Positions 7,210 through 27,767 of a DNA stretch of 64,000 nt are shown piece after piece (position 1 is the stretch's first letter; every line of letters begins with the position of its first letter). The position numbers were made by a program, and so were the translations under genes. The notes below the pieces were generated by a model that made no database searches, was not told the origin of the DNA, and worked only from the letters and a program-made list of their open reading frames with translations. Location of the stretch: contig OZ076411.1 of NCBI GenBank assembly GCA_964187785.1, forward strand, positions 44,826,001 to 44,890,000, in the 5' to 3' direction. Origin of the DNA: Amphiscolops sp. MND2022 (lineage: Eukaryota).

Positions 7210-7948
7210 CAGTAGACCATCCACAACACGACATTTATGCTATTCAGGCCAAAAACCAAGACGTTCCACTTGTACATAGTATAGTGATAACTGTAAAAAA
7301 AACTTACTTCAGCATTGACCCATGTGCGGTTCCTCCATTAAAAACTACTTTGAAGGAAATGCTTGAAACATCACCTACGGATTGTCCCAACTATCGCTTC
7401 AAGGTGTGGACATGGCATGAAAAGAGATTAGAGTTCACGTTAGCTGCTATCAATCCCCGACTCCCACCCAAGATGTTTTTTTGCGAACGTGAATTCTAAA
7501 GACACAAACGTAGCAATGGTACGCTGTGTCACCGCGCATCAGCTATGGAAACAAGATGTCGTGACTTCCCCTCCTGGAGATGTGTATCACTCAACCGCTG
7601 GTTGGTGGCTATTAGTCAATTCCCTGGATGAATCATCACTAGTGTCGCCGGGAACTCTATTAATTAGTCTTCAGAATATACGTACACTCGTCGAGCTCGA
7701 CAACACTCTTTGTTTCCGTTTAGCTAAAATCTTTCGCAGCAAAATCCATATTCAACATTGGTTACAGCTACTAGCTATAATTTTCTGTCGCCAAGCCAAA
7801 ATAGGCCTATTAGACAAACAACCATATACGTTTGAAACGCCTGTAACAGTACTGGAAGCATTCGCCGTTGTTCGCGATTGGTCAACCACAAACATGGGAA
7901 ACCGCCCGCTGCGACAACTAAGTTCGGCAAGATCGTCGAGCCATTGTC
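7210..7948 (+). repeat. Segment A, 739 bp, near-identical to 26551-27289
   Basis: Direct comparison shows two substitutions and two compensating homopolymer indels. Confidence 0.95.
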
Positions 7949-8811: not shown

Positions 8812-8983
8812 TCTTTCACTGTGTTGAGAGTTTGACCATTCAACAATCTGAGCAATGTGGATTCGACTAACAAAGACAAGAAATCAAGATATTATCTTCT
8901 GATCACTTGCAACTAAATACTGTCAGCAGCAGAACAATAGTGAAATCGTACATGACAGGAGACGGATATGAATTCAATCTTAG
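8812..8983 (+). repeat. Segment B, 172 bp left flank of the large transposon, repeated at 27288-27459
   Basis: Direct sequence identity by eye. Confidence 0.95.
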
Positions 8984-9330: not shown

Positions 9331-10325
9331 AAATGTTACAATAGTGAATTTAATTCATTCAGTACGCGCGGTCCTTATGTATTTTTATTAAGTTTAATTG
9401 TAATTCATTTTTTTCAGTGTTTTTTTATTGCTCAAATTGAATCAAACAATATAAAAAAAATAGTGAATTTAATTGATCAGTTGATAATTTTTTTCATCAA
9501 ATTAACGGAAGAATCATTGTTAAAATTATAATAAAGGTTTACAATGATTGCTCAAGTTAAATTGTTCTGAACCAGTTAGATTCTAAGGTGCTAAAATATT
9601 TTTTAATTGAGACTTTTACTAGATTTTTTGAATGAATAATTCAATTTTTTTGCAGCAACGATTTTTTTCTGAACCAATAGCACCTCCGTTTTAGCTTTTT
9701 ACTTCGTTACTTGTCAAAAGTTTCTAAACCGTGAGTAACAAAAGCAAAATTGAATTGACATTGAGTCTTTAAAAGAATTACTAAATATTTCTAATCCATG
9801 AGCAACAAAGGAAAAACTTCAATTGAAATCGAGTCTTTCAATGAGTTATTAGAAACCAGTTGTCTGAAACCAACAGGAGCAACAAAAGCAAAAAGAAATT
9901 GAATTCGAGTCACTCTTTGAACTTTCAAGCCTCATCGATTTTGGCCACATGAAACAGGTTCCGGAAAACGAATTAGACCATCCTAATTGTTATTATCTCT
10001 TCGAGTCACTCTTTGAGTTTTCAAAAACTTTTAAACTAGGAATATAAATGAAATATTAGAACTATTTTAAATTTGAGTCAAAAATTTGAACACGAAAATA
10101 AATTTCATTGAAGTTTACCAAAGTACAGAATCATGTTCACGACTACATCAAATAATCGGATTGTGCCTCTTTCAAATTGTGTCTAATTACTTCTCGGTAG
10201 CTTGAAGCTGGATACACCCCTTCAATTGTCACCAAACCACATTTAATGAAGGACATGCTGAATATTTTCCGGATATAAAATCTCATTGACTTGATGTATT
10301 TATCGCTTTCTTCGTATGATCCTGG

Positions 10326-11662
10326 TCATCTGTCCCAAGATTTGCCGAGAACTGAGTCCCAAGATTCATTACATCCAACTTCAGTGCAGGCATTTTGAAT
10401 TGAAAACATGACATCTTTCTCTTTTTCGAATCCAAGGCTTCTTTTTGCAAAATCGTCAGCGATGCAAATAATCCCGGAGTAGCCAAACTTGGACCCTAGA
10501 GCCATACCCACTGCATGCTTCACAGCTGAATAAATGCCACACACTTTATCGATGGGGTGAATTAGTTCCTGTATCAAATTCTCGTGGGTACTTTTTAATA
10601 AATAGTTGCGTTCTTTGAGTTGTACCATAGTCGAAGGCATGGTCACAGTAACATCGTCACACTCTTCGGACACCATTGTCACAAAAACAATATGCTTGTC
10701 TTTTTTGTAAGTTGACTTCATTTCGATCACTGTTGCTGCCTCACCAGAGTGATCAAGGACCTTGGCACCAATTTGAAGTATCCCATTTATGCAAGGGAAG
10801 CATTTCATCGGTACTCGTTCGACCGACTTCTGAAAATAAAAAAATTGCTCATGAGACTCTTCACTGATATGACGCACATATGACACATCTCATGACGCAT
10901 AACTCATCACTTAAAAATGATTTCTGAGAAAAACTGACTTTTCCTGAATCAAATTCGAAAAATGAAAAAAATATATTTTTGAATGAAGTGCTTCTATGGT
11001 TAAATACTTACAGGGACCAATGTAGACATATCGACAGGCTCAGTTTGTTTCTTTGCTCCAAAGGTTACTTTTTTGGGCTTTGGAGCAGTTAATTTTTCTT
11101 CTTTATCGTCGTTTGAACAATAATTTTCGTCTTCGATATTATCAAGATTTGTCGACGAGGACGGCTGGTGAGCGACTCGGATGGCACATAGATCATTGTA
11201 TGGAAATTTCAAAGTGGGATAGTTTGTGTTAAGGGCTTTGATTTCTTCGTGGTCTTCATGCCAATTTTCGTAATCTTCCTCCAACAAAATTTCCATTACA
11301 CTTTTCACTGAGTCATTTTTGAATACCCAACCCGGCGTTTTTAGGCCGTCCTTCAAAAAACATACTTGATCGCAACGAGAAAGGAATTTTGGATTGTAAT
11401 CAAGTTGTTCTTTTTTTGTTCGACGGCGTTTTTCGGGTAAAACATCTCTTATCGCTGCAGATTTTCGAATATTCCACTTTTCAGGTTGCCCCCTTATGTT
11501 TTCTTCTACGTGAATTTCTGATGTGGTATTTTTGCCGAAATATTTCCACTGCACAATCACCGTCCAGTCATCTTTGATAGATACAATTTTTGCCTTCCAC
11601 CAAATAAAAAGTTCATCAACTGCATCGACAATGTCGTTAACTTGAAATTTTTTTGATAGCAT
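10326..11662 (-). CDS. Two-exon gene (11662-11012, 10829-10326; about 384 aa) with an N-terminal Tudor/Agenet-like chromatin-reader barrel
   Basis: FQVNDIVDAVDELFIWWKAKIVSIKDDWTVIVQW resembles Tudor-knot/PHF20-type barrels. GTAAGT donor at 11011 and TTTTCAG acceptor before 10829 join in phase 0. Confidence 0.65.
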
Positions 11663-11821
11663 CTTTTTCGGGATTTTTGGTATGAACGTAAGATGAAGTT
11701 AATTCGGGAATGAAATTTGAGATATGACACAAAAAATGCTGATCTAATATTTTGAAAATAAGCCTGTGAACTTCAGAGTGTGAAACTCATTTCTTTGCGT
11801 TTCGAAGACTCATTTTAGTGA

Positions 11822-11909
11822 CAATGTGACGCGTCACATTGGCCTCAAAAAGAGTCACTCTTTTTGGACACATTTGAACGAATCTTTGACGGTCAAAGAT
11901 TTGTTCAAA
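11822..11909. promoter_or_regulatory. Two palindromes in the divergent intergenic region between the Tudor gene and the transposase locus
   Basis: Perfect 20-bp CAATGTGACGCGTCACATTG (11822-11841) and an 18-bp-arm inverted repeat with one mismatch (11873-11909). Confidence 0.5.
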
Positions 11910-12038
11910 ATGATGGAAGTTTTTTTCAAACCAATATGACTCTTTTCCAACGGATGTAAATATCATGATAACATAATATGATAATATACTTGATAAAGAT
12001 CACACTTTTTTATAAACCATTACAACCTAATCTTTTCA

Positions 12039-13024
12039 TTGCTTTCAAACAATCAATTCATTGCTTATTATTCTCAAATGGATCTTTGGAAACAACATTC
12101 AATGATCATCGATGGCCGACATTTTATTGATTACGAACTTATCGATTATTTACGTGATCACACAGAGGGAAACAAATGCCGACAAGCAGAAGTCCTTGTA
12201 AAGCATGTCATCAGCGGAACCTCGTTGAACTTCCAGGATCTCATTGTGACATGGACCAAAAAAGGAATGAAACGTCACTCAGTCTTCATCGCAGTAAGTT
12301 ACTTCTGGTTGTGACACTTTTTCATCGTAAAATTAGCCTCATTTTGAGAAAAACGCATTTTTATATCAAAAAACTGCTTTTAAAGTAGTAATGACGAGGT
12401 ATAAATCATCACTCGTTTTTTTGCAGTTTTGTGATCTTCTTCTAGAGAAAAAATTATTTTAAAATCGATCTAAGACTTAAAACTATATATCATACAAATT
12501 TGTATCGATTTTTTCTAAACCGGGAGCAAACAAAAATTGCTCCAGAATCAGAAAAAAACCAACATATACATATCTGCATTTAAATTCAAACAAATGCTCA
12601 CAGTTTAGAATTGATTATTGTTTTTTCATTTCAGGCTCAAATAATGCAGCTGATTGTTCTGAGTGGCGGCAAAAGTCTACCCTGGTCACAAAAAAGAAAT
12701 GCTTTCATCAAGGCTTTTTTGGGGTTGGATTTGTACCCTGCAAACCCTTTCCAGGATGTTGTTGCTTCAGCGACGAGTTGTTGTAGTGCTTCCATGACAA
12801 CTCAGGAAACACAAACAGATGAGGTCGCAACGATTGAAACACCTTCCATTCAAATAGACGCAGTCTCCGTGACTGAACCCCCTAACTCCATTTGTATCGA
12901 CGAAGTCCCAGCGACTGAACCCTCTACCATTCGAATGGACGAAGTCCTCGTGACTGAACCCCTTAACCCTATATGTATTGACGACGTCCCCATGACTGAA
13001 TCTCAAACGATGATGAAGCCTTAA
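12039..13024 (+). CDS. Two-exon ORF upstream of the transposase (exon to 12293, intron 12294-12634, exon 12635-13024) with about 14-aa VTEP tandem repeats
   Basis: GCA|GTAAGT donor and TTTCAG|GCT acceptor join in phase 0; repeats VTEPPNSICIDEV, ATEPSTIRMDEV, VTEPLNPICIDDV. The stop overlaps the transposase ATG (TAATG). Confidence 0.55.
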
Positions 13025-14781
13025 TGGATGAGGAAAACGTGTCGTCTCGGAATCGCAAAACTAAGGCTCGAAAACTGGAACTGAAAAGAGTAGCAAGGTT
13101 GCAGAAATGTCCGTATATTTCTTGGAAATACGTTTTGAATCACGCCAAAACTAACAATGTTGACTTCGAGATACTAATAGAAGTGATCCTGAAAGTATCA
13201 AAAACGAAACAATCATCGTATCTTAAAACAATTGTTGAAAAACTTTTCCTAAATATGAAGTCCAAAGAGGCGATGATTTCAAGTCTTGCTGTTTCGGTTC
13301 GATCAGGAAATATTGATGTAATTTCAACGATTCGGGCTAATTTATCGATCAACGGACAGCTGCACAACATTATTCCATCCTCAAGAGCGATCCGAAGTTT
13401 CTCGAAGATCTTAACGAATGCGTTCATTTTGATGTGCAAACCAGAAGCCACGTTCTCAGGGTTTCGATGTGATCTCGTCAAGTGTGTCAAAATCGCCGCG
13501 TGGCTCCTTTTTGAAACTGAAGACCTTTCTGAATTGACTATCGATTTATGGGGAGATGGATGTGAGATTGGTGGTGTCGATCATACAAGAATGTGCTTCC
13601 GGATACTGAAGAATTATTTCTCGAAAGTTACCGTTCAATCAGCTACTGTGGCATTTTGTTTTAGCGCATTTCATGGTAAAGATAGTAGATTTACCCTTGA
13701 ACAAAATCTCGGACCTTCAGTTGTTGGGAACCAAGAAACAGGATGGCTGTACAAACAAACCAAAGAACTCTCATCTCAAGGTGCCATCGTGACTTGTTCT
13801 GGAGACAATCCTTATTTATATCGTTTGATTGAGGGTATTGATAGCGATGCCTCATCAAAATATCCATCTGATCTTGCACTTTATGTTGGTGAGGCAAAAT
13901 TTTTCCCAACTGATGTCGACCCTTCAACAGGATTCCGCTACAAAGTTAATGTGCCCTTCAGGAGAGAAATACCCCCTCAATCGCTCGTACATCTCGATGA
14001 CATACGATGTGTTGTACCGGATGTCACCCACATGATCACCCGTTGTGTCGAAAGTGACCTCAAGAAAGTTGCCCAAAAAATCGTTCGAAAAAAATATCCT
14101 TATCACAAGAAAACTATTGAAACCCTCGAAGAAAACTGCACTCGAAGAGGAATAAAGAAACCCAGATTCAAATTCGACGTGGAGATCAGAGGAACAAGTG
14201 ATTTGAAAAAACCAACAGTTGGATCCGTCTCTTTGTCTGGAACGTCTGCTATTGTTGCCATTGCTGAAAAAGATGAATTTGAAGGTGTAGAAGGCTTACC
14301 AAACATTTTCGACAATTTATGGAACAATGAGATTATCTTTGACCCCAAGAACGACAACATGGACAAAGATGATGCCCGTGCAGCCCGCAATGCGTTTTAC
14401 GCCCTCAAGAAACTGCACTCCGACAAAATTCCAAATTCAGACAGTTATAAAACCAAAGATTGTGCCCAATTGCTACAAACAAGCTTGAATAAATGCGCAA
14501 AACTTTTGAGAGGTTCAAAAAATGGCCTTGACATTGAACAATTCGAAATTTGGTCCGAGACATACTATCAATGCTCAATTCTTTTCTTTTCCGGAAAACA
14601 CGGTTTGACACCATATAAGTTGAAGATGATAATGATACCCCAGATTTTGAAGGCGGGTTTCGCAATGAGTCCTTGGTACCATATGTGTGAAGCAATGGAG
14701 AAATCAAATCACCACGCACATAAAGACTTCCAAACGAAAACGATGAGAGGTGGAGGGAAAATTCATGTGAATTACCAGTGA
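13024..14781 (+). CDS. 585-aa DDE transposase, Chapaev/Transib/RAG1-core-like
   Basis: Ordered motifs LWGDG (D178), CSGDNPYL (D261), PDVTHMITRCVE (D333/H336), SLSGTSA, LTPYKL and CEAMEKSN (E559) parallel RAG1 D600/D708/E962 and Chapaev ISGDG/GGDWKFL/DTLH/TPYMH/LEKLN as I recall them. Confidence 0.8.
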   Translation: MDEENVSSRNRKTKARKLELKRVARLQKCPYISWKYVLNHAKTNNVDFEILIEVILKVSKTKQSSYLKTIVEKLFLNMKSKEAMISSLAVSVRSGNIDVISTIRANLSINGQLHNIIPSSRAIRSFSKILTNAFILMCKPEATFSGFRCDLVKCVKIAAWLLFETEDLSELTIDLWGDGCEIGGVDHTRMCFRILKNYFSKVTVQSATVAFCFSAFHGKDSRFTLEQNLGPSVVGNQETGWLYKQTKELSSQGAIVTCSGDNPYLYRLIEGIDSDASSKYPSDLALYVGEAKFFPTDVDPSTGFRYKVNVPFRREIPPQSLVHLDDIRCVVPDVTHMITRCVESDLKKVAQKIVRKKYPYHKKTIETLEENCTRRGIKKPRFKFDVEIRGTSDLKKPTVGSVSLSGTSAIVAIAEKDEFEGVEGLPNIFDNLWNNEIIFDPKNDNMDKDDARAARNAFYALKKLHSDKIPNSDSYKTKDCAQLLQTSLNKCAKLLRGSKNGLDIEQFEIWSETYYQCSILFFSGKHGLTPYKLKMIMIPQILKAGFAMSPWYHMCEAMEKSNHHAHKDFQTKTMRGGGKIHVNYQ

Positions 14782-15335
14782 ATTTGCTAATCGATAAAAT
14801 GACCACAATTTTCGCAATCGAAAAAAGCGAGACCTATACCGAAATTTGTCAAAAAATTGTGCCTCTTCCAGTGATTGATGTTGGTGCTCAGCGAAAGAAA
14901 CAGGAATTGCTCTTTGGTTTCCGATTCCACGTGGTTGGCTTTTTCCCTGGAGTCAAAGACAATCAAAAGGGAGTTGAAGACATGATAATTGAATTGGGTG
15001 GAGAAGTATTGACAAAAGAAAAAGCACTGGGCTTGACCAAACGTCATAGTAAAACTCCGAATTGCTTCATTGTACTCTATAACGATTTCGAATTGAAGAG
15101 GGCCACCACTGGAAACGGAGACCACAACTCTGCATCTGGTTCGGAAAGTGACAACCCCGTGAAATTTACCAAATCATCATCCAGGCGAACAATCAAGCCA
15201 CGTATCATGGTGAAGGGCCCAGCTCAAACCTGTCTACTATTTGCGGCAACGGATTTTCAATTCCTGAACGTTGCCTACATCTTTGATACAAACAACTCTG
15301 ATCGTGTTCTTGACCCTTCAAAGTATCTTATGTGA
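14778..15335 (+). CDS. BRCT-domain ORF directly after the transposase (possibly its spliced C-terminus)
   Basis: GFRFHVVGFF...VEDMIIELGGEVL and C-terminal FQFLNVAYIFDT..S.RVLDPSKYL follow the BRCT pattern. Confidence 0.6.
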   Translation: MNLLIDKMTTIFAIEKSETYTEICQKIVPLPVIDVGAQRKKQELLFGFRFHVVGFFPGVKDNQKGVEDMIIELGGEVLTKEKALGLTKRHSKTPNCFIVLYNDFELKRATTGNGDHNSASGSESDNPVKFTKSSSRRTIKPRIMVKGPAQTCLLFAATDFQFLNVAYIFDTNNSDRVLDPSKYLM

Positions 15336-15844
15336 AGTGCCACTGAAATTGAACGAATCTGTGTGAATGATCAACGACCACTTTTTGCGAAACAGAGAAA
15401 TCCTAACAATACCGAAAATGTTACCACATCATTGGTTTATGCATTGAAGATCTCGAGAAAGCGGGCCCGCGAAGAAGAACAAGAATTTGACCACGTAAAT
15501 GATAATATGAAGAAAGACAAACACACATGAACGTTTTTTTTATGACAAGGCTTTTGACATGGATCATCTAATCCTATCATTTATATGACTTTTCGAAAAT
15601 TTATTCTTGGTCATTGAATGATCATCTATGATGTTTTCAAAATCTTTGTCCTGATCACTGATTGATCGTCTATGATGTTTTCGTAGAAAAAACCATATCT
15701 CTTGAAGAATTATCAAAAAATCAAATGCTTGAAAAATGAATAAACCAAATCAATAATTCAAATATCAAATCAATAATTATTCAAAAAAGTTTTTTCTAAA
15801 CTTGCTAAGAGAGGAGAATGCTAAGAGAATATTGAGAATAGTAT

Positions 15845-17003
15845 TTATTCTGAAAACATCTTTCTTGCTTCTTGATCCCCATAATCATATCTTAGCTCGT
15901 CGAAGGGAGGAATGTCATGTTTCGCCACCATTAACAACACAGATTTGCTGGAGGATAGATTCAAAATAACAGGTTTGACGTTGGTGTGCTTAGGAGATTT
16001 GTGGCTTATCAATCGGGCCATGCATCTATTCTTCATATGATCGACTACTGGACATAGTTCGTTTGAAGCATCGATTAGATGTTTCAGTGAAATCTGAAAA
16101 AGATATTCACTGCATTCTGGGTGATCAGCCATGTAATCGTTGGCAGTGATGCCCTTCACGACTTTTCCATGGTAATCATCAAGGATTTGATCCTTGTCTA
16201 TGAAATCGGTGGTAATGACTCCCCGGCCGAATCCTTTGATGTTGACGTCACATATGAATGGCCACGTCTGATCTTTGCAGGTTTTCGTCAGGATCTTTTT
16301 AAATTGTTCATGCTGATCTTCTCTTGAGGGGAGCATCAAAGCCTGTGATCGTAACGAGACAGTCTGTGTCTGGAGTGCCTCGGGTTTCAACCGACATTGA
16401 ACGATTTTCCAGGTCTGAAAAGAGTTGGTGTTAATAATCAAATTTATACTTGCGATTTTGTGAAATTTCTTTTTAAAAAATATTTTTTTTATTTCTTCAA
16501 CAATTTCTTCTTCAATAAAATTCAATGCTCTTGAATCTCCCAATTTAATGCTCTTAAGATAACGTTTCTTCTGAAGTTTTTTAAAATGACATATTTTGAT
16601 TGGAAAATAGACAGCAGAAAAACTGAAATACTTTTTTGAGGTCTTCATTTTCGTTCCACCCTCTTGTTTTGTACAGACTTTTGAGTTTCTCATGGGTCGG
16701 GTTCTGGGCATAACGCTTTCCAAAATCACAATACTCGAGGAAAGCCTTAGCCCTTGCGACTTGTCTCGCATATTTTTGGGCACTTTGCCGGGAAACGACA
16801 GCTGACCCCAGTTCTCGCTCAGTAATTTCATTTTGGGCCGCCCACTCCTTGTCAACTTTCAAGGCCCATATTTCAGACATTGTCCGTTTCTTTTTCAAAA
16901 ATGTTGCATCGGGCGATGCTGATATTGGCATATAGGATTTGACGTATTTTCCCACTCTGACGTATATTCCCACTCGATGGTGTCGCGGCTTCTTTTTTTC
17001 CAT
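15845..17003 (-). CDS. KMT5A/PR-Set7-like SET-domain protein, last two exons (17003-16632, 16570-15845)
   Basis: KGFGRGVITT..DYHG, YLFQ..IDAS, MARLISH, LLMVAKHDI..FDELRYDYGD. A 61-nt GTATTT...TTCAG intron (16631-16571) joins the two ORFs in phase 0. Confidence 0.85.
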
Positions 17004-17009
17004 CTGCAG

Positions 17010-17210
17010 AAAAATCATTTGAAAATATTTCTAAACCATGAGCACATCTTTTCAATATGCAAAAAAAAATAATTTTAAAATACGTCTAAACCACAAGCAC
17101 GTCTTTTCAATGTGCAAAAACGAATCATTTGAAAATATTTCTAAACCACGAGCACATTTCATCAATATGCGAAAAGAATCATTTGAAAATATTTCTAAAC
17201 CACGAGCACA
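17010..17210 (+). repeat. About 55-bp tandem repeats, each carrying the 15-bp element motif
   Basis: Motif copies at 17029, 17084, 17139 and 17193 within repeated atcatttgaaaatatttctaaaccacgagcaca. Confidence 0.85.
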
Positions 17211-18147: not shown

Positions 18148-19403
18148 TTGGTAGTTGGGAGTAGACTGATATATTGCATTTGAATTGTGCGAATGATTAG
18201 TGTATTATGGAAGCGGAGGAGGTAACAAAGGTGTGAGGGAAGTTGAGTCTGTGGTAACGAGCCAAGAAAGTTAGTGCTCGCGTTAAGATCAATTTGTCTA
18301 AGAGGCTGACTCGACATTGTGAAATTTTGACAGAAATTATAGAGAGCAGAAATTGAAAAATGATTCTAAGTTGAATGCAGCCGCTTAAATATATATCTTT
18401 AATAACCCACATCATGTGATAATCCAATGACACCATGCCAAATCGCGGAATATTAATTACCACCCGTGGTGTCATTCGATAATCCGCGATGTCGCATGGT
18501 GTCAATGGATTATCAATATATGGATGCTGATAAAATGCCCATTAATCTTCCGCAAAAATTGACATAGTTACTTCATCGCACAATTTTAAATGAAATTTGA
18601 AAAGACTACTATACCTTAATTAGTTGAAACTCTAAGAATAATCGGCGCAATAATAATTAAACATGCGTGAAGAATTCAGAAATGGATAATTAACCATTAA
18701 CCTCATGTTTAAAGATATAAATTTGGACATTTAATCGATTTCTTCTTGCTCCCAGAACGACACAAGAATTCACGTAAGCATAATTATTCATGATTTTAAG
18801 AATCCCCACACGCATAATTAACCATGGCAAATTTTCTTTTAAGGCAGTAGCACACGAAGTTTATTCAAATTGCAATTGAATTTTTGTGGATTCTTCAAAG
18901 TAATGATTAAACATTCGCATGCAAAAATTCTTCCAAACTTAATGCTCCTGGTTTAGAAAATTGATGTTTTCATTAGGTTTTTCATTATTAAAATCATGAT
19001 ACAATTTTCAGTACATGTTAACTACTCTTGCGCTATTGGTTTGGAAACTTTATCAGCTCAGGTTTTCTTATAGAACTTTGTATTTTAATAGCAAAATAAA
19101 AAACGTTATCGAACTTGTATTTTCATCGACTCATATGCTCACGGTTTAAAAACTTTTAATTCATTTTAGAATTTTTTTTTGTAACTACATTCTTGTACTC
19201 GCAGGAAGCTAGACTGAAGTGCTAGATATAACCTCAAAAGATTTTTTTTCAGCAAAAGAATAATAGCCCTCTTGAATTTTCGTGTTTTTTGGAAGAGTAA
19301 ATGAAAAAGATTAAAGGCGTCCATAATCAGAAAATCATAAGTATAAATCATACAAAGTATAAGTACAACATAACAAGTTCAGATCATGATCATCTTATTC
19401 AAA

Positions 19404-22400
19404 CTAAGCCCCTGAGGGGGATGATGGCAATTCAATTGCCGAATTCTTCTGTCTCTTGTTTCTCTTTTTCATTAGGGCTCTCTGTTCGTCATAGGGAAAA
19501 CGAAAAGCCAAGTTGGAATGTGCTGAGGGGGGAATGCAGCGTGCAACTTGACACTTCGAGAGTGAAAGCTTGTTTTCTTCATCGGGGGCACAATCGAGTA
19601 GTAGCAGACAAACTTTCTCTGCGTAAGGGACCAGTCTAAACAACATTTGTTTTTCGAATGTTCAAACAATTTTGTTGTTCAACATCAATAAGGGTTGAAA
19701 TTTTCTCATTTAAAAAAAAAGATATCTGGACAAATGTAAAATATGCATTTTGCTCACGGTTGAGAAACTTCTTCTATGATTAGTAAGTTGTTAGCAAAGC
19801 TAATAAAAATTCTCACTAGTGAGCAAAAGCAAGAAAAAATCAATAAATTAATATTTTGTGGGTGAAGATAACGTGATCGTCTGGTTTCAATTCGTTTTCC
19901 AGCAATGTGATATCGTCGATTCGCTCTTCGAATTTCCTGGGTGGATCATGCGCGTACTCCAATTCGGGACTCCGCGAACACAGCTCGGGTATGATGGCTT
20001 GGAAATCATCGCCCACCCGTGTTTCAGCCTTTTTGTCCAATTGCTTGTTCTTGGACGGGCCACGGATCTTGAAAAAAGTTGAATCCTAATTTTTTCTATG
20101 TCAGAATGAACATCAAAAAACCACTTGACAAAAACTTGATCAATCACTCTTAAGGAATTTATTGACTGTGGATGAATAGGCGCTGGTGGTGGTATGGATG
20201 AGGTGCTGGAGGAGGTATCGGTGGAAACTTTCGGTTGAACCCGGGAGAGAGCAACAGACCAAAAACCCTCAGGCACAAGACGTCTTTTCAGCAGGGTCAT
20301 GATCATCTCTTCGAGGAGATCAAAATGAGGACACGCCTTGAAATAAAAATTTGATATATTAATTTCATCAACGCTTGTGAGAGGAAAAAAAAACAGATTT
20401 TTGCTATCTCAAAAAACTGATTGCTATTGATAATTGATAAAAACTTTTAAAAAATTGATAGAAAGCAAAAAATCATTGAAAAATTATTGACTCTTCAACT
20501 GGATCATTTTTCACATTTTTCAAACTGGTTTACTTCTTTGATGATTGGCATTTCTTGATGGAATTTTGTCTTGAGGCGCTTCAAAAAATTCCACACCCAG
20601 ACCGAAGACACATCGCCTCGACCATCATTCTTCTGCTCCATGACATGCGAGTATATGAGAGCAGCCAACACTCCCGACAAGCAGGGATAGACACTGTCCG
20701 CATCATCGTCGTTTCGCACATGGGAGTCAATCACCAAACCCATGTGACCAAAGGAGAGAAAATTCGATCCGAGTGCGATGGAATCCCCAACTGTGAGGAC
20801 GCAATGAATCCAATTTGAGGGCATTATGATGGTGTCACCTGCTTTTGCATGGATTCTATGGCATCCGCCTTCAATCGAAGCCATATCGCCAAACGACAAG
20901 TTTTAAAAAATTAATGTTCTTTTTGTCAAAATATTCAGATTCATTTCATCAGAGTCTCAGTTGAGGAAAAACTCAAAATTGATCACAGTTCAGATACTTT
21001 TTTGCCGGAAATGACCTTGAATTTTTTGACAAAAAAATTGACAAAACGAGTGAGTCAGCGAAAAAACTCACGGTTTAGAAATAAAAGATTTATTCAAGTC
21101 AGTGTATATACTTGAATGGAATGAAATATAGCTTCAGATAAACAATGTGTTGAAAAATACTTTTCGACATATAACTTTCTGGGCATTAACTGGAATAGAA
21201 CATGAATGGCTCACGGTTTAGAAAAAATTGTAAAAATAGGTAGCCTGTTAGTAGATTCGAACTTGGTAACTACGACTTTGAACTCTCAAGTTTAACCAAC
21301 TATGCCACCGAGCCCTTGTATACATTAAATTTTCATTGCCATATACTTACTGACTGGGGTTGTCATGCAAGCAGTATTTCTCGAACATGTTGAGATTCTT
21401 TTTTGTTGGCTCAGCAAGCCAAAAAATTTTCTCCCCGCGCAACACCACATAGAAGACTGATGTTCCGGAGAAATCAATGTGCCATGGCGTGACACAACGG
21501 TCGTTTGAAAGCAAGAGGAAATTCCAAGTGCTTGCCGCGAAATATCCTTCGCTATGGGGGGTTAAAGATTCGGCAAACGGATCCATTGCCATCTTCCGTA
21601 CTGCTGTCGGTGGTTTGAAGACCTTGATAATATACAATCAACTCTTTTATCGCTAACAGAAAAAAAATCTTACTACTAGTAAGTTTTTTCCTTCTGACAA
21701 AACAAACACTTCTGCTATAGCTACTAGTAGTACTAGTAGCTATAGCAGAAGTGTTTGTTTTGTCAGAAGGAAAAAGGGTTAAAATTTAAAAAAAAATCAT
21801 TTTTACCCCAGGACGGAGGATTACGTCAATAACATTGACCGGAAAAGCATTCAATGGCGCAGAGTCTGGATCCCGTTGTTCTGCGGGGTATTCGGCTCTT
21901 GACAACTTTCGTGAGAGGACAGGCTTGGGGGACGATGGTGAACTTTGCAAAAAAAATTGTTATTGTTTTGCCTCCTCATTGAAAGACTTCTGGTATATAT
22001 TTTTTCTTCAGAGAATTGTTAGTTAGTTTCTTAGTAGGTTAGTTTCTCATTGCTCACGGTTTAGAAAGTTCCAAATACTCACTTGACAAAAACGAGCTGA
22101 TTTGCAGTCGAGTTTTTTGTCTGGATCAGACATGAATCCCAGCAAATGTTCGGCATTATCCGGAAAACTGGTGATGTGAGCTGGTATTTGCGGTACACGC
22201 AGCCCTTGTGCGTTCTTGGCCGCATCTTTCCACAGGATCGGAATCCCGTGAAGCATGAAGAAGGTCACTTGCTCAATTTCTCGATCAACGTGGCCACTCC
22301 ATGTCACGGTTTTCGCCTCAGGGTTGATCCGTGTTCCTTCGATATGATCGAAGTACCGTTGAGAACCCTCAGTTGCTGACTTTCTGGGGTAGCGAAGGAA

Positions 22401-23671
22401 TTTTGCTGTCTCCTTCCACGCGTGCAGATAGTTTCGATCCATGTGTCTTTCATAACTATATTTATGCAAAAACACTTGATCGCATCCAACACATGTTTTG
22501 AGATCTCCGATGACAGTCTCTGCAAAATTAAAACTTGATTGTTTACAGTTGAAATTCTTAATGTATAAAGTTCTTGAATTATAAGTTTGAACAGGAAAAT
22601 ATAATGACCAGTACATTCAAAAGACTTTGACTTTACACGACACAACTTTCATGCGCCTCAAAACTCTTTTTGCTCAATTGTTGGCGTACGTCATAGAGAA
22701 ACAACTGAATCACTGGAAAAAAAATTGAAATCTGAAACGGGAGGTTCTAAATACATCTGAAGACTCAAAAAAATATTATGTACACATGCAGGGGCCTTCA
22801 AAGGAAGATTAATTTGGCTTCGAATCGTTTGCTTTTTTGCAGAAATATTTTTTGACCAGTTATTGACGTACATCGTAGAGAAACAACTGAAACACGAGAG
22901 AAAATGTTTTCTTTAAAAGTGAAATGGGAGGGTCTGAATACATCTGGAGGTTCAAAAAATTGACATGTACACATGCAGGAGGCTTAAGAGAAAGTTATTT
23001 TGTCGTCGATTACTGTGGTTTTTTGCATAAAAACGTTTTGACCAGTTATTGGCGTACGTCATAAAGAAACAACTGAAACGTTGAAAAATTTTTCAATAAT
23101 TTCGAAATGGGAGGTTCTAAATACATCTGGAGGTTCAAAAAATTGACATGTTCACGTGCAGGAGGCTTCAAGAGAAAGTTATTTTGTCTTCGATTTCTTT
23201 GCTTTTTTGCATAAAATTTTTTTGACCAGTTATTGGCGTACGTCATAAAGAAACAACTGGAACGGTGGAAAATTTTTTTCAATAATTTCGAAATGGGAGG
23301 TTCTAAATACATCTGGAGACTCAAAAAATTGACATGTACACATGCAGCGGGCTTCAACGGAACAATATTTTGGCTTCAATTTTTGTGTTTTTACATTAAA
23401 AAAGTTTTTTGACCTTTTATTGGCGTACGTCACTAAAGAAACAACTGAAACACTGGGAAAACTTTTGATTGAAATCGAAGTGTTTGAACTCACTGTTTTT
23501 GAACAAAGCTGGAGCTTTTCCCTCGTTGAGTCTCTGGACTCTTTTCGCGCATGCTTTTGACTCTTTATGCCGTTCTAAGGCCAATTTCGACGAGACAGGT
23601 TGTCCACAAAGGTCGCAAACTTTCGGAAGATAATTCTTCGGAGAATCCTGTTTTCCTTGGCATTTCTTCAA
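19404..23671 (-). CDS. Multi-exon gene: C2H2-type zinc finger(s), KDM2/KDM7-like JmjC demethylase, ELM2-like domain
   Basis: Exon peptides in order: CDLCGQPVSSKLALERH, CVGCDQVFLHKYSYERH, HGIPILWKDAAKNAQGLRVP, PVNVIDV, VFKPPTAVRK..VTPWHIDFSGTSVFYVVLRGEKIFWL, GDTIIMPSNWIHCVLTVGDSIALGSNFL, ETRVGDDFQAIIPEL. That all exons form one transcript is inferred. Confidence 0.7.
19850..20060 (-). CDS. ELM2-like exon
   Basis: ETRVGDDFQAIIPEL resembles the ELM2 start IRVG.EYQA.IP.L; only the N-terminal motif is recognised. Confidence 0.6.
20531..20902 (-). CDS. JmjC catalytic exon 2 (distal His)
   Basis: CHRIHAKAGDTIIMPSNWIHCVLTVGDSIALGSNFL matches KDM2 CQRIELKQG.TF.IPSGWIHAVYTP.D.LVFGGNFL. Confidence 0.88.
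21241..21315 (-). ncRNA. tRNA-derived/Pol III promoter-like sequence inside a JmjC intron
   Basis: Minus strand GGGCTCGG-TGGCATAGTTGG (A box)...AGTTCGAATC (B box); acceptor and T stems do not pair well, so not a functional tRNA. Confidence 0.45.
21351..21622 (-). CDS. JmjC catalytic exon 1 (HxD)
   Basis: TPWHIDFSGTSVFYVVLRGEKIFWL matches KDM2/PHF8 TDFHIDFGGTSVWYHV.RG.KIFWL; acceptor before 21622, GTAAGT donor at 21350. Confidence 0.9.
21685..21775. repeat. Perfect 91-bp palindrome (45-bp arms, 1-nt spacer at 21730)
   Basis: tttttccttctgacaaaacaaacacttctgctatagctactagta-g-exact reverse complement, inside intron 21806-21623. Confidence 0.95.
22680..23450. repeat. About 185-bp tandem repeat, four full units plus a partial
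   Basis: Anchor ttggcgtacgtcatarAgaaacaactgaa recurs at about 22681, 22863, 23049, 23233 and 23420. Confidence 0.9.
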
Positions 23672-24965
23672 GTGTCTTTAGAAGTTGTATTTACGAGTCG
23701 ACTCGTAGTCGCAAAGTTCACATCTCATGATATCAAGTCAAGTTTCTGTGACAAAGTTTCACTATGATAATCCACTGGTTTTGGCTCACGGTTTAGAAAC
23801 AAATTGAAAATTTCATCATGTCAAACATGGGCGAAATTTTATACAAAACGTGGTGAAAATTTCATTCAAATCATCAGAAATTCTCGTCAAATTCATTTTC
23901 AATCTGATTTTTGTTTTGAAGTGCTCATGGTTTAGAAATAATGTTTCTTCAAAAAATGTATTCGAAGTTAGGTGAAGTTCAAATTCATTAGTTGGGTGTA
24001 AAACTACATTCAAATCATCTCATTTTATTATTGCAAAGGCTCGTCGAATTGATTTTAAAGTGCATTTTCAAAAATTAGAAATAACGAATTACCTTCAAAG
24101 ACAAAAAGGGTGAAGAGAGAAGAGGTTACTTCAAAGATCAAGCGGTAAACAAGAGGTTTGCACGAAACGGAGCAACTGTAAAATCGAAAAATAGGGGTCT
24201 TCCTAGGAGTTCGAAATTTTATTTTAATTATCAGGAGTCCGAAAAAGAACACAACAGTGAAAATTGAATTTGCACAAAAAATATTCAAATACTAAATTAG
24301 GCGAATGGCTCATTTATACCAAGGTATCTGCAGGTATGTAGCTATGTAGTTGATTTCGACAGGCCCTGAATTAATGAAAATCCTTGATTTCGTCAGGTCT
24401 GGGACTTCGCTGTTTCAAGTTATTTTCGAGTTTTTGTTACTTGTATGTATGTTCTTTTAATTCAATTTTGCCTAGAACTCAATTTTTTGACGCTCACGGT
24501 AGTTAGTTTCAAATAAATACATTGTTAAAGTTGCATAAAAACTGTGAAATACAAATGAAACGGCTTAATGATCTTTCGAACTTATTGGTATTAAAATGTA
24601 TTTCCGGACTCGTGAATAGCAATCGAATAATAACAGTGATAAATTGAGTTTTAACGTGCTAGGCGAATGACTTGCTGCAAAGTGATTTGAAGGAAGGAAT
24701 TCAAATGAATCGGCGAGTTTGCTCGCGGAGTAGAAATTTTATACAAGCATTTGTTTGCATTGCTCGCGGAGTAGAAATTTTATACATGCATTTGTTTGCA
24801 TTGTGAAGCAATATTTTCGTATAATGCAAAGTCTTATTTGCATTGTGAAGCGAAACGAAATTTCCTTACAAGATTGATGCCTGGATATTTTATAAAATTT
24901 CGCACTTTGTGCCCAAATGTGCCATAGTATGATGATGTTTAAAATCAATTCGAAAGATAGTTTTT

Positions 24966-25407
24966 GCTCAGGGTTTAGAAACAATGATACGAATCTAATT
25001 CCATAATTCAAAAGAAAACTCAAAACAAAAACTCAGCTTTTGCTCACAATTTAGAAATAATTCCAAGAATCAAAAAGAAAACTCAAAAGAAAAACTCATG
25101 AAATTTCTAAAAGAACTTAGCTTTTGCTCACGGTTTAGAAAAAATGAAACGAAAGTAATTCCATATTTCAAAATGAAAACTCAGAGGAAAAACTCATGAA
25201 AACTCATTAGAAAAACTCAGTTTCTGCTCACGATTTAGAAATATTGAAACGAATCGATTTTCATTATTACTGACTCAAATTACAAACTCATAATTTGGCT
25301 CATGGTTTAGAAATAACCTTGATGACTCAACTCATAACTCATAACTTGGCTCTTGGTTTAGAAAGAAAACTGATGACTCAACTCATAACTTGGCTCATGG
25401 ATTAGAA
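24966..25407 (-). repeat. Cluster of seven 15-bp element motifs near the right end
   Basis: GCTCAYGGTTTAGAA variants at 24966, 25042, 25126, 25226, 25298, 25349 and 25393. Confidence 0.9.
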
Positions 25408-26242: not shown

Positions 26243-27767
26243 AGTGGTGTTCAAACCACCGGCCTCTGTACGATTGACGCAGCCTGTGATAACTGTGCAA
26301 GTTTCCAGTAGAGCAAATGCATTCCCGTGTTTGATGTCTGACTGATGTCATGTGTTTCAGTCCTACGGTCGTCGTCTTCTGAACCGCTTGTTCTGCCTGA
26401 ACTTCATACACTTGAATGGACGATGGATGAACTCCCTAAAGACAAGACGAACACGGTAACTGAAAGGGATCCCCAATCACGCGTCGGAGCACAATGGACT
26501 GAATGGACGCTTATTTGTAATTTGTTTCGATGTTTTATGTGTCTTGTTTCCAGTAGACCATCCACAACACGACATTTATGCTATTCAGGCCAAAAACCAA
26601 GACGTTCCACTTGTACATAGTATAGTGATAACTGTAAAAAAAAACTTACTTCAGCATTGACCCATGTGCGGTTCCTCCATTAAAAACTACTTTGAAGGAA
26701 ATGCTTGAAACATCACCTACGGATTGTCCCAACTATCGCTTCAAGGTGTGGACATGGCATGAAAAGAGATTAGAGTTCACGTTAGCTGCTATCAATCCCC
26801 GACTCCCACCGAAGATGTTTTTTGCGAACGTGAATTCTAAAGACACAAACGTAGCAATGGTACGCTGTGTCACCGCGCATCAGCTATGGAAACAAGATGT
26901 CGTGACTTCCCCTCCTGGAGATGTGTATCACTCAACCGCTGGTTGGTGGCTATTAGTCAATTCCCTGGATGAATCATCACTAGTGTCGCCGGGAACTCTG
27001 TTAATTAGTCTTCAGAATATACGTACACTCGTCGAGCTCGACAACACTCTTTGTTTCCGTTTAGCTAAAATCTTTCGCAGCAAAATCCATATTCAACATT
27101 GGTTACAGCTACTAGCTATAATTTTCTGTCGCCAAGCCAAAATAGGCCTATTAGACAAACAACCATATACGTTTGAAACGCCTGTAACAGTACTGGAAGC
27201 ATTCGCCGTTGTTCGCGATTGGTCAACCACAAACATGGGAAACCGCCCGCTGCGACAACTAAGTTCGGCAAGATCGTCGAGCCATTGTCTTTCACTGTGT
27301 TGAGAGTTTGACCATTCAACAATCTGAGCAATGTGGATTCGACTAACAAAGACAAGAAATCAAGATATTATCTTCTGATCACTTGCAACTAAATACTGTC
27401 AGCAGCAGAACAATAGTGAAATCGTACATGACAGGAGACGGATATGAATTCAATCTTAGTGGTGTTCAAACCACCGGCCTCTGTACGATTGACGCAGCCT
27501 GTGATAACTGTGCAAGTTTCCAGTAGAGCAAATGCATTCCCGTGTTTGATGTCTGACTGATGTCATGTGTTTCAGTCCTACGGTCGTCGTCTTCTGAACC
27601 GCTTGTTCTGCCTGAACTTCATACACTTGAATGGACGATGGATGAACTCCCTAAAGACAAGACGAACACGGTAACTGAAAGGGATCCCCAATCACGCGTC
27701 GGAGCACAATGGACTGAATGGACGCTTATTTGTAATTTGTTTCGATGTTTTATGTGTCTTGTTTCCA
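26243..27767 (+). repeat. Composite duplication C-A'-B'-C' (C 26243-26552; A' 26551-27289; B' 27288-27459; C' 27458-27767)
   Basis: Constant offsets of 19341 (A), 18476 (B) and 1215 (C); junction overlaps CA, TC and AG. Confidence 0.95.

What the first reader, a model, noticed from the sequence alone, without database searches (positions are those of the whole stretch)
19404..23671. C2H2 zinc finger-JmjC-ELM2 architecture: a possible sequence-targeted histone demethylase
Seen: the Fe(II) ligands HxD...H (WHID, WIH) and the 2-oxoglutarate T and K positions are retained, and a C2H2 finger shares an exon with the JmjC N-terminal segment. Established: animal KDM2 uses CXXC/PHD/F-box and KDM7 uses PHD; C2H2-guided JmjC targeting is known from plant REF6/ELF6; ELM2 recruits HDAC1/2 in MTA, CoREST and MIER proteins. 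Inference: a new shuffled architecture that may recognise the 15-bp motif. Caveat: the 22082/21947 junction is out of phase and an in-frame TAA lies at 20905-20903 if the 20919 acceptor is used.
Basis: partly seen in the sequence, partly recalled or inferred. Interest (0 to 1): 0.85.

Follow-up and report, generated by a model that had tools for sequence, protein, structure and literature searches.

The report
Dead copy of transposon-borne demethylase gene
This stretch is a broken copy of a gene carried by a giant jumping gene; intact sister copies encode an enzyme of the kind that removes methyl marks from histones, fused to three zinc fingers and a short motif known from deacetylase-recruiting proteins, so the unusual design is real, but what it does is untested.

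Summary
On the minus strand, 23728-19404, lie three C2H2-type fingers, a KDM2/7-type JmjC core with all Fe(II)/2-oxoglutarate residues, and an ELM2-type N-terminal motif.

It is not a working host gene. It is cargo of a ~17-kb terminal-inverted-repeat DNA transposon present in many copies. Against 12 other copies, the window copy has five disabling lesions of its own:
- TAA in finger 1
- exon 3 acceptor AG changed to TG
- exon 5 acceptor lost
- 18-nt deletion of the exon 7 donor
- 1-nt deletion in exon 8

L006 and L016 read open through eight phase-compatible exons (719 and 703 aa); L005, L007 and L008 show no lesion.

dN/dS between the two subfamilies is 0.37 overall and 0.16 in the JmjC part. 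The finger-JmjC order recurs in lineages with 27-65% amino-acid identity. The ELM2 motif recurs in two of them.

Only the first 22-35 of 53 ELM2 positions match, and no SANT domain was found. No RNA data were available. Binding to the 15-bp motif is untested.

Other windows of this scan already noted this element family and architecture. I found no paper describing it.

The parts
23494..23728 (-). Exon 1. ATG at 23728. Finger 1 at 23722-23660 (C-x2-C-x12-H-x4-C), finger 2 at 23617-23549. In-frame TAA at 23680-23678, private to the window copy. Donor GT at 23493-23492, phase 1.
   Evidence: All 12 other copies have GAA, GAG or GGA at the TAA codon. Pfam zf-C2H2 at 31.2 bits (cut-off 25.2) on the intact L006 exon.
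22667..23466 (.). 186-bp tandem repeat, 4.3 units, inside intron 1. Unit number differs between copies.
22083..22519 (-). Exon 2. Finger 3 at 22493-22422, then a conserved ~90-residue segment in the position of the JmjC N-terminal flank. The window has a private in-frame 9-nt deletion just before the finger's first Cys.
   Evidence: Reads carry the 9 nt. The flank gave no PDB or Pfam hit.
21807..21947 (-). Exon 3. It is in phase with exon 2, but the ancestral acceptor AG is TG here (21949-21948; A to T at 21949).
   Evidence: (13-copy alignment)
21685..21775 (.). Perfect 45+45-nt palindrome in intron 3. This intron is 184 nt in the window and 126 nt in L006 and L016.
   Evidence: (opposite-strand joints)
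21351..21622 (-). Exon 4, first half of the JmjC core. T 21490-88, H 21481-79, D 21475-73, Y 21451-49, K 21430-28. The donor leaves phase 2.
   Evidence: (PHF8 at E=4e-12)
20534..20903 (-). Exon 5, second half of the JmjC core with the second His at 20806-20804, plus a helical tail. The ancestral acceptor (T-run, then AG) is lost in the window, which has TA at 20905-20904. The upstream AG at 20920-20919 reads into TAA at 20905-20903.
20136..20336 (-). Exon 6, a low-complexity linker.
19859..20067 (-). Exon 7. ELM2-type motif (ETRVGDDFQAIIPE) at 20025-19984. An 18-nt deletion near 19859/19858 removes the donor, so the frame runs on to TGA at 19842-19840.
19404..19635 (-). Exon 8. The ancestral frame reads WSLTQRKF... 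and the window has a 1-nt deletion near 19532/19531.
   Evidence: (reads carry the extra base)
19752..23798 (-). Five instances of the 15-bp motif TTCTAAACCGTGAGC inside or just upstream of the gene: 19752, 21066, 21209, 22052 and 23784. All lie on the gene's strand, in introns or about 56 bp upstream of the ATG.

Best explanation
The stretch is a decayed copy of a cargo gene of a ~17-kb terminal-inverted-repeat DNA transposon.

Shown. In intact copies the gene has eight exons and encodes a 703-719-aa protein. Its parts are three separate C2H2-type fingers, a KDM2/7-type JmjC domain with a complete Fe(II)/2-oxoglutarate site, a linker, and an ELM2-type N-terminal motif followed by a conserved tail. 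The window copy has five private disabling lesions. The gene has stayed with the transposase through deep divergence, under purifying selection.

Inferred. The intact protein is an active lysine demethylase that the element uses on chromatin. The most likely role is to remove repressive methyl marks from its own copies or from target sites. The fingers would provide nucleic-acid targeting. The ELM2 motif would dock a partner such as a class I deacetylase. The direction of the effect (activating or repressing) and the substrate are not known.
For: Cargo status:
- 13 copies at 90-97% nucleotide identity lie on different contigs. The exon 5 ORF cluster has 16 members; the 15 listed lie on about 24 contigs.
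- The same 24-nt terminus beginning CATTACGAGG sits at both ends in inverted orientation. In L002 the right-end terminus abuts a different flank.
- The transposase ORF is syntenic in L001 (70% aa) and L009 (42% aa over 580 aa). The SET gene is syntenic in L001 and L010.

Private lesions. DNA reads carry the unbroken states at 20904-20905, 19526 and 22494.

Intact copies: the L006 coding sequence is 2160 nt and that of L016 is 2112 nt, each with a single terminal stop. L005, L007 and L008 show no lesion.

Selection, L006 against L016:
- whole gene dN/dS 0.37 (46.3 synonymous against 63.7 non-synonymous, p=2e-6)
- JmjC part 0.16 (p=5e-7)
- introns 8.7% divergent

Architecture conserved:
- L001, L009, L010 and marine-metagenome contigs L011 and L013 have fingers upstream of the JmjC exons.
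- L001 keeps the intron phases.
- ELM2 scores: L006 at 29.0 bits, the window at 24.8 and L010 at 22.1, against a cut-off of 21.7.
- The best PDB matches of the motif profile are the ELM2 motifs of MIDEAS and MTA1.

Catalytic residues.
Against: - No RNA evidence. The four runs that hold the stretch are DNA, so transcription and exon linkage rest on conservation alone.
- Some 'copies' may be two haplotypes of one insertion. The fetched loci lie wholly inside the element, so their flanks could not be compared.
- Only the first 22-35 of 53 ELM2 positions match. The PDB matches are weak (E 0.05-0.4). No SANT domain was found.
- The finger part shows only 4 differences between the subfamilies, so selection on it could not be measured.
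- No Jumonji helical domain was detected, although cellular relatives have one.
- A deacetylase-docking motif would point to repression, not anti-silencing.
Confidence: 0.8

Rival explanations
1. One reading: a functional host gene at this locus, with a newly shuffled architecture, encodes a sequence-targeted histone demethylase.
For: The domains and catalytic residues are present.
Against: This copy has a nonsense codon, two lost acceptors, a deleted donor and a frameshift. It lies inside a multi-copy element bounded by inverted terminal repeats.
Confidence: 0.03
2. The protein of intact copies binds the element-specific 15-bp motif array through its fingers and erases repressive marks on its own element. 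This would be an enzymatic analogue of the sequence-specific anti-silencing proteins (VANC) of plant VANDAL transposons.
For: - The motif occurs 22 times where 0.12 are expected, and only inside the element.
- Each diverged lineage has its own dispersed 13-15-nt motif, and the window's motif is absent from them.
- Motif columns differ at about 4% between subfamilies, against 6.5-8% for other non-coding columns (p 0.014-0.057; the comparisons are not independent).
- VANC proteins bind motifs in non-coding regions of their own elements (abstracts of PMC5735166 and PMC10398659).
Against:
- The fingers are isolated, not a tandem array.
- Motif orientation flips at the element's midpoint (plus strand at 9722-17207, minus strand at 18944-25407, with one exception at 12596). 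This symmetry about the ends is what transposase-binding sites show.
- The motif constraint is only marginally significant.
Confidence: 0.2
3. The JmjC protein acts without demethylating histones. It could be a non-catalytic anti-heterochromatin factor like fission-yeast Epe1, or a hydroxylase or demethylase of a non-histone protein such as the transposase.
For: [quoted passage not shown]
- The helical domain seen in cellular relatives is not detected here.
Against: All iron and 2-oxoglutarate ligands are kept in every lineage examined. The JmjC part has the lowest dN/dS, 0.16, which argues for a retained active site.
Confidence: 0.15
4. The finger exons, the JmjC exons and the ELM2 exons belong to separate transcripts that only happen to be adjacent.
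For: No RNA data are available. In the marine contigs L011-L013 an OTU-protease ORF lies between the exon-1-like finger exon and the JmjC exons, although a second finger sits just upstream of the JmjC exons.
Against: - Two copies have one uninterrupted frame across all eight exons, with canonical sites.
- The phase-1, phase-2 and phase-1 junctions are conserved in L001 at 42-65% amino-acid identity.
- No in-frame start or stop separates the parts.
Confidence: 0.08

Closest known systems
KDM7/PHF8/PHF2 and KDM2 (JHDM1) JmjC demethylases, including C. elegans KDM7A (PDB 3n9l)
   Same: These are the best sequence matches. They share the HxD...H iron triad and the Thr/Tyr/Lys 2-oxoglutarate contacts, with the same spacing.
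   Different: - Cellular members scanned carry JHD, PHD or both. From established knowledge, KDM2 uses CXXC and F-box domains.
- Here the N-terminus has three C2H2-type fingers, no helical domain is detected, the C-terminus has an ELM2-type motif, and the gene rides in a transposon.
Plant REF6/ELF6 and yeast Rph1/Gis1 (JmjC enzymes with C2H2 fingers)
   Same: A JmjC enzyme is combined with C2H2 fingers. In REF6 the fingers give DNA-sequence targeting (established knowledge). Rph1 and Gis1 are zinc-finger proteins with JmjC domains (abstract of PMC4085034).
   Different: Those are KDM4-type enzymes with JmjN and C-terminal tandem fingers, and they are host genes. This one is KDM2/7-type with N-terminal, non-tandem fingers, and it is mobile-element cargo.
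ELM2-SANT co-repressor scaffolds (MTA1, MIDEAS, MIER, CoREST)
   Same: The motif of the form [ED]-[IT]-R-V-G-x-x-[FY]-Q-A-x-I-P matches the start of the ELM2 domain. Its best PDB matches are the MIDEAS and MTA1 ELM2 motifs from HDAC1 complexes.
   Different: Only the first 22-35 of 53 profile positions match. No SANT domain was found. No JmjC domain is known in those scaffolds.
VANC anti-silencing proteins of Arabidopsis VANDAL transposons
   Same: Both involve an element-encoded chromatin-acting protein, together with family-specific short motifs scattered through non-coding parts of the same element.
   Different: VANC is not an enzyme and is unrelated in sequence. Here binding is untested, and the host is an animal.
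Fission-yeast Epe1
   Same: It is a JmjC protein of the same broad clade that counteracts H3K9 heterochromatin.
   Different: It is a host gene, has no fingers or ELM2 motif, and its catalytic activity is disputed.

Membership tests
KDM2/7-clade JmjC oxygenases | HxD...H iron triad in a JmjC (cupin) core | tested here: met
   H 21481-79, D 21475-73 and H 20806-04 align to the ligands of PHF8 and C. elegans KDM7A. The Pfam JmjC hits on single exons fall below the cut-off because the domain is split.
KDM2/7-clade JmjC oxygenases | 2-oxoglutarate contacts (Thr three residues before the first His; Tyr and Lys after it) | tested here: met
   TPWHID...SVFYVV...GEKIF aligns with the PHF8 stretch TDFHID...SVWYHV...GEKIF. 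Which residues contact 2-oxoglutarate is from established knowledge of the PHF8 and KDM7A structures.
KDM2/7-clade JmjC oxygenases | Jumonji helical domain (PF17811) after the core | tested here: inconclusive
   It is not reported for exon 5 of the window or of L006 at E up to 1. It is present in 15 of the 18 cellular relatives scanned. The region is conserved within the element family.
KDM2/7-clade JmjC oxygenases | PHD or CXXC reader N-terminal to the core | tested here: not met
   No PHD or CXXC hit. C2H2-type fingers take that place. There is one weak PHD hit (18 bits, below cut-off) in the marine lineage L011.
KDM2/7-clade JmjC oxygenases | Lysine demethylase activity | not testable with these tools
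   This needs a recombinant enzyme assay.
ELM2-SANT deacetylase-recruiting module | ELM2 N-terminal motif | tested here: met
   Pfam ELM2 scores 29.0 bits (L006), 24.8 (window) and 22.1 (L010) against a cut-off of 21.7. L001 scores only 13.2.
ELM2-SANT deacetylase-recruiting module | Remainder of the ELM2 domain (profile positions about 23-53) | tested here: not met
   The matches end at profile position 22-35.
ELM2-SANT deacetylase-recruiting module | SANT domain following ELM2 | tested here: not met
   The exon 8 peptide has no Pfam hit at E up to 1. A profile of three lineages gave no SANT or Myb match in the PDB.
ELM2-SANT deacetylase-recruiting module | Binding of HDAC1/2 | not testable with these tools
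   This needs co-immunoprecipitation or reconstitution.
C2H2 zinc fingers | C-x2-C-x12-H-x3-6-H/C ligand spacing, conserved | tested here: met
   Three fingers in the window family, L001 and L010, and two each in L009 and L011, all with ligands kept. Pfam zf-C2H2 scores 31.2 bits against a cut-off of 25.2 on the intact exon 1. Finger 3 is weak (E=0.08).
C2H2 zinc fingers | Tandem array with short conserved linkers, as in sequence-specific polydactyl DNA binders | tested here: not met
   Fingers 1 and 2 are 14 residues apart. Finger 3 is about 30 residues further on and in another exon.
Cargo gene of a terminal-inverted-repeat DNA transposon | Many copies with shared ends and different flanks, syntenic with a transposase across lineages | tested here: met
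   The transposase's own family could not be confirmed by sequence (no PDB or Pfam hit).
Functional gene at this locus | Open frame with intact splice sites | tested here: not met
   TAA at 23680-78; TG in place of the acceptor at 21949-48; TA in place of the acceptor at 20905-04; 18-nt donor deletion near 19859; 1-nt deletion near 19532.

The most novel reading that the evidence does not exclude
An animal DNA transposon encodes its own sequence-guided chromatin editor. The finger-JmjC-ELM2 protein would recognise the lineage-specific short motifs strewn through its own element. It would then enzymatically reset histone methylation there, and possibly acetylation through a docked deacetylase, so that the element escapes or tunes host silencing. 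Motif and fingers would co-evolve between element lineages.
Probability: 0.2. Interest if true: 0.9.

Novelty: new variant of a known kind. Interest (0 to 1): 0.6.

Why it matters
Transposons are known to be targets of histone-methylation silencing. Very few are known to carry tools against it, and the best-studied case (plant VANC) is not an enzyme.

Here a demethylase-type enzyme has been kept under selection inside a giant cut-and-paste element, with its own fingers and a co-repressor-type docking motif. The same element also carries a SET-domain gene and a Tudor-like gene.

If the protein acts on the element's own chromatin, it would be a direct, testable example of a mobile element that edits histone marks in an animal. 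It would also be a natural example of a finger-guided JmjC enzyme.

For this window alone the result is ordinary: the copy is a pseudogene.

Tried and rejected
RNA evidence. Both run searches returned the same four runs. Laid on the stretch, they cover introns evenly and show no splice joints, so they are DNA.

My own first gene models, dropped after comparing copies:
- A frameshift in exon 4, suggested by a chance resemblance in another frame.
- A cryptic acceptor at 21907-21906 as the true start of exon 3. Five copies have AA there, and the real acceptor lies 42 nt upstream.
- A donor at 19957 joined to the LVPYAEK frame of the last exon. Other copies show a 33-nt in-frame stretch and a canonical donor further on, and the conserved frame is WSLTQRKF.

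Searches that found nothing:
- A SANT domain in exon 8.
- A PDB match for the exon 2 flank, as a single sequence or as a four-lineage profile.
- The transposase against PDB and Pfam.
- A tRNA-like stretch that I thought I saw in intron 4: no ARAGORN or Rfam match.
- Rfam over the whole window.
- The 4571-aa hit P0004 with 15 JmjC-like stretches: an unrelated repetitive protein.

Steps not done:
- A KDM2-versus-KDM7 tree.
- A structure prediction.
None was built.
Full report
**What is in the window**

The gene lies on the minus strand and has short introns with T-rich acceptors. Translation and ORF listing give the following pieces.

- An exon from ATG 23728 carries two fingers: C-x2-C-x12-H-x4-C at 23722-23660 and C-x2-C-x12-H-x5-C at 23617-23549.
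- Exon 2 (22519-22083) carries a third finger and a conserved ~90-residue flank.
- Exon 3 runs 21947-21807.
- Exon 4 (21622-21351) carries TPWHID, then Y and GEKIF.
- Exon 5 (20903-20534) carries NWIH.
- Exon 6 (20336-20136) is a linker.
- Exon 7 starts at 20067 and carries the motif ETRVGDDFQAIIPE.
- Exon 8 runs 19635-19404.

Exons 4 and 5 match PHF8, KDM2A, KDM7A, PHF2 and C. elegans KDM7A in the PDB (E=4e-12 and 6.5e-8). The iron and 2-oxoglutarate residues are aligned.

Pfam reports ELM2 above its cut-off (24.8 against 21.7 bits), but only for profile positions 2-23 of 53.

**The gene is transposon cargo**

An exhaustive search with exon 5 found ORF fragments of many near-identical and diverged relatives. 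The 90% cluster has 16 members; the 15 listed lie on about 24 contigs of one assembly.

I fetched 12 further copies (L002-L008 and L014-L018). I also fetched diverged relatives from the same assembly (L001, L009, L010) and from marine metagenomes (L011-L013).

L002 aligns to the window from 26250 down to the end of that locus at 10577, with 89-97% identity, and then stops. The 24-nt terminus beginning CATTACGAGG sits at both ends of the window's element in inverted orientation. In L002 the right-end terminus abuts a different flank.

The 585-aa ORF at 13024-14781 is the presumed transposase. I could not confirm its family by sequence. It is syntenic with the JmjC gene in L001 (70% aa) and L009 (42% aa over 580 residues). 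The SET gene is syntenic in L001 and L010.

Earlier notes of this scan describe the same element family and the same gene architecture on other windows. I treated them as leads and re-derived the points above.

**The window copy is dead, and its lesions are private**

Alignment of 13 copies shows five disabling changes found only in the window.

1. TAA at 23680-23678, in finger 1. All other copies have GAA, GAG or GGA there.
2. The exon 3 acceptor is TG instead of AG (A to T at 21949). Exon 3 starting at 21947 is in phase. The next AG, at 21944-21943, is not.
3. The exon 5 acceptor (a T-run followed by AG) has become TA at 20905-20904. The next AG upstream, 20920-20919, keeps the phase but reads into TAA at 20905-20903.
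4. An 18-nt deletion near 19859 removes the exon 7 donor.
5. A 1-nt deletion near 19532 shifts exon 8.

There is also a private in-frame 9-nt deletion just before finger 3.

DNA contigs from four public runs carry the unbroken states at 20904-20905, 19526 and 22494.

Other copies have different lesions of their own:
- L002: start codon GTG, two frameshifts and a TGA.
- L003: exon 5 acceptor TG.
- L004: a 1-nt deletion in exon 4.
- L014, L017 and L018: larger deletions, plus a stop in exon 4 of L014.

**Intact copies exist and the gene was under selection**

Joining the eight exons of L006 gives 2160 nt with one terminal stop (719 aa). L016, from the window's own subfamily, gives 2112 nt (703 aa).

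L005, L007 and L008 show no lesion against the L006 model. L015 differs only by an in-frame 6-nt deletion. Some of these may be two haplotypes of one insertion; I could not check their flanks.

Between L006 and L016:
- dN/dS is 0.37 overall (46.3 synonymous against 63.7 non-synonymous differences, p=2e-6 for an excess of synonymous changes).
- It is 0.16 in the JmjC part (p=5e-7).
- It is 0.54 in the C-terminal part (p=0.017).
- The finger part has only four differences and says nothing.
- Introns are 8.7% divergent.

**Is it one gene?**

No RNA evidence could be obtained. The only runs holding the stretch are DNA. The case therefore rests on conservation.

L001 has 42-65% amino-acid identity. 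It has the same order: finger, finger, finger, flank, JmjC, tail, ELM2-like motif (IMFGSNFQPAIPP), then the WSL...APSAH tail. Its junctions are canonical, frame-compatible and free of stops. It has the same phases as the window family at exon 1/2 (phase 1), exon 4/5 (phase 2) and exon 7/8 (phase 1).

L009, L010 and the marine contigs also have fingers upstream of the JmjC exons. L010 has an ELM2 hit above cut-off (22.1 bits). No ELM2-like motif was found in L009 or L011.

**How far the domain names hold**

- Fingers. Pfam zf-C2H2 is above cut-off on the intact exon 1 (31.2 bits) and the ligands are conserved in all lineages. The fingers are isolated, not a tandem array.
- JmjC. It belongs to the KDM2/7 clade by best matches. 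Of the 18 full-length cellular relatives scanned, 15 carry JHD and 9 PHD beside JmjC, and none has C2H2 or ELM2. The helical domain is not detected in the element's protein.
- ELM2. Only the N-terminal motif matches. A profile of five sequences finds the ELM2 motifs of MIDEAS (6z2j) and MTA1 (4bkx) as the top PDB hits, but weakly (E 0.05-0.2). From established knowledge, this motif is the part that lies on HDAC1 in those complexes.
- SANT. No SANT domain was found in the tail.

The full deacetylase-recruiting module is therefore not present as known. Recruitment is a hypothesis.

**The 15-bp motif**

TTCTAAACCGTGAGC (up to 2 mismatches) occurs 22 times where 0.12 are expected. All instances lie between 9722 and 25407. 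Orientation is plus up to 17207 and minus from 18944, with one exception at 12596. Five instances lie in or just upstream of this gene.

The diverged lineages lack this motif, but each has its own dispersed 13-15-nt motif.

Between subfamilies, motif columns differ at about 4%, against 6.5-8% for other non-coding columns. The p values are 0.014-0.057 and the comparisons are not independent.

The motifs are thus probably functional sites that co-vary with the element lineage. This fits an element-encoded DNA binder. Their symmetry about the element's midpoint points at least as much to the transposase as to the finger-JmjC protein. Nothing here tests who binds them.

**Mechanism**

Shown: the architecture, its conservation, the intact active-site residues, selection, cargo status, and the death of this copy.

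Inferred: the intact protein is an active lysine demethylase used by the element on chromatin.

My best guess, at about 35-40%, is removal of repressive marks on the element or at target sites (anti-silencing). A repressive or self-limiting role is also possible, as would fit a deacetylase-docking motif. So is a non-catalytic role like that of Epe1.

**Novelty**

I found no paper that mentions Transib together with JmjC, and none that describes a JmjC-ELM2 protein or a DNA transposon carrying JmjC and SET genes. The search covers open-access text only.

The closest analogues are named in the comparison fields. I file this as a new variant of a known kind: a finger-guided JmjC enzyme, here of the KDM2/7 type, carrying an ELM2 motif and borne by a transposon.

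The window's copy itself is an ordinary pseudogene. The interest lies in the family.

Noticed in passing
window 21685-21775: A perfect 45+45-nt palindrome with 1 nt between the arms lies in intron 3. This intron is 184 nt here and 126 nt in L006 and L016. It looks like a private inverted duplication. Read contigs show opposite-strand joints there.
   Followed up: partly
window 22667-23466: A 186-bp tandem repeat (4.3 units, 81% matches) fills most of intron 1. Read depth rises several-fold over it, and the unit number differs between copies.
   Followed up: partly
L001, L009, L010, L011 (whole loci): Each diverged lineage of the element has its own dispersed short motif: GAAGAATCCACAAA (L001), GTCGTGGAAACCAA (L009), CAGTGGATTCCACAA (L010) and AGAGTGGTCCCTA (L011). 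The L001 and L010 motifs share the core GAATCCAC.
   Followed up: partly
window 7210-7948 and 8812-8983, against 26551-27289 and 27288-27459: The sequence left of the element is repeated, at 99.5-100% identity, to the right of it. The element's left flank therefore reappears about 1.2 kb beyond its right end. The flanks are retrotransposon-like ORFs.
   Followed up: partly
L002:1-2034: Just outside the right end of the L002 copy lies a 697-aa ORF with a Pfam Monjiviricetes_fusion (viral fusion glycoprotein) hit.
   Followed up: no
L011:1731-3797 (also L012, L013; Tara Oceans marine metagenome contigs): A distant relative of the finger-JmjC gene, from marine metagenomes, has a 688-aa OTU-protease ORF between its first finger exon and the JmjC exons. 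The exon-1-like ORF also gives a weak PHD hit.
   Followed up: no
window 14778-15335: The ORF directly after the presumed transposase gives weak DUF7811 and BRCT_2 hits. The 220-aa ORF at 11000-11662 and the transposase itself have no Pfam hit.
   Followed up: no
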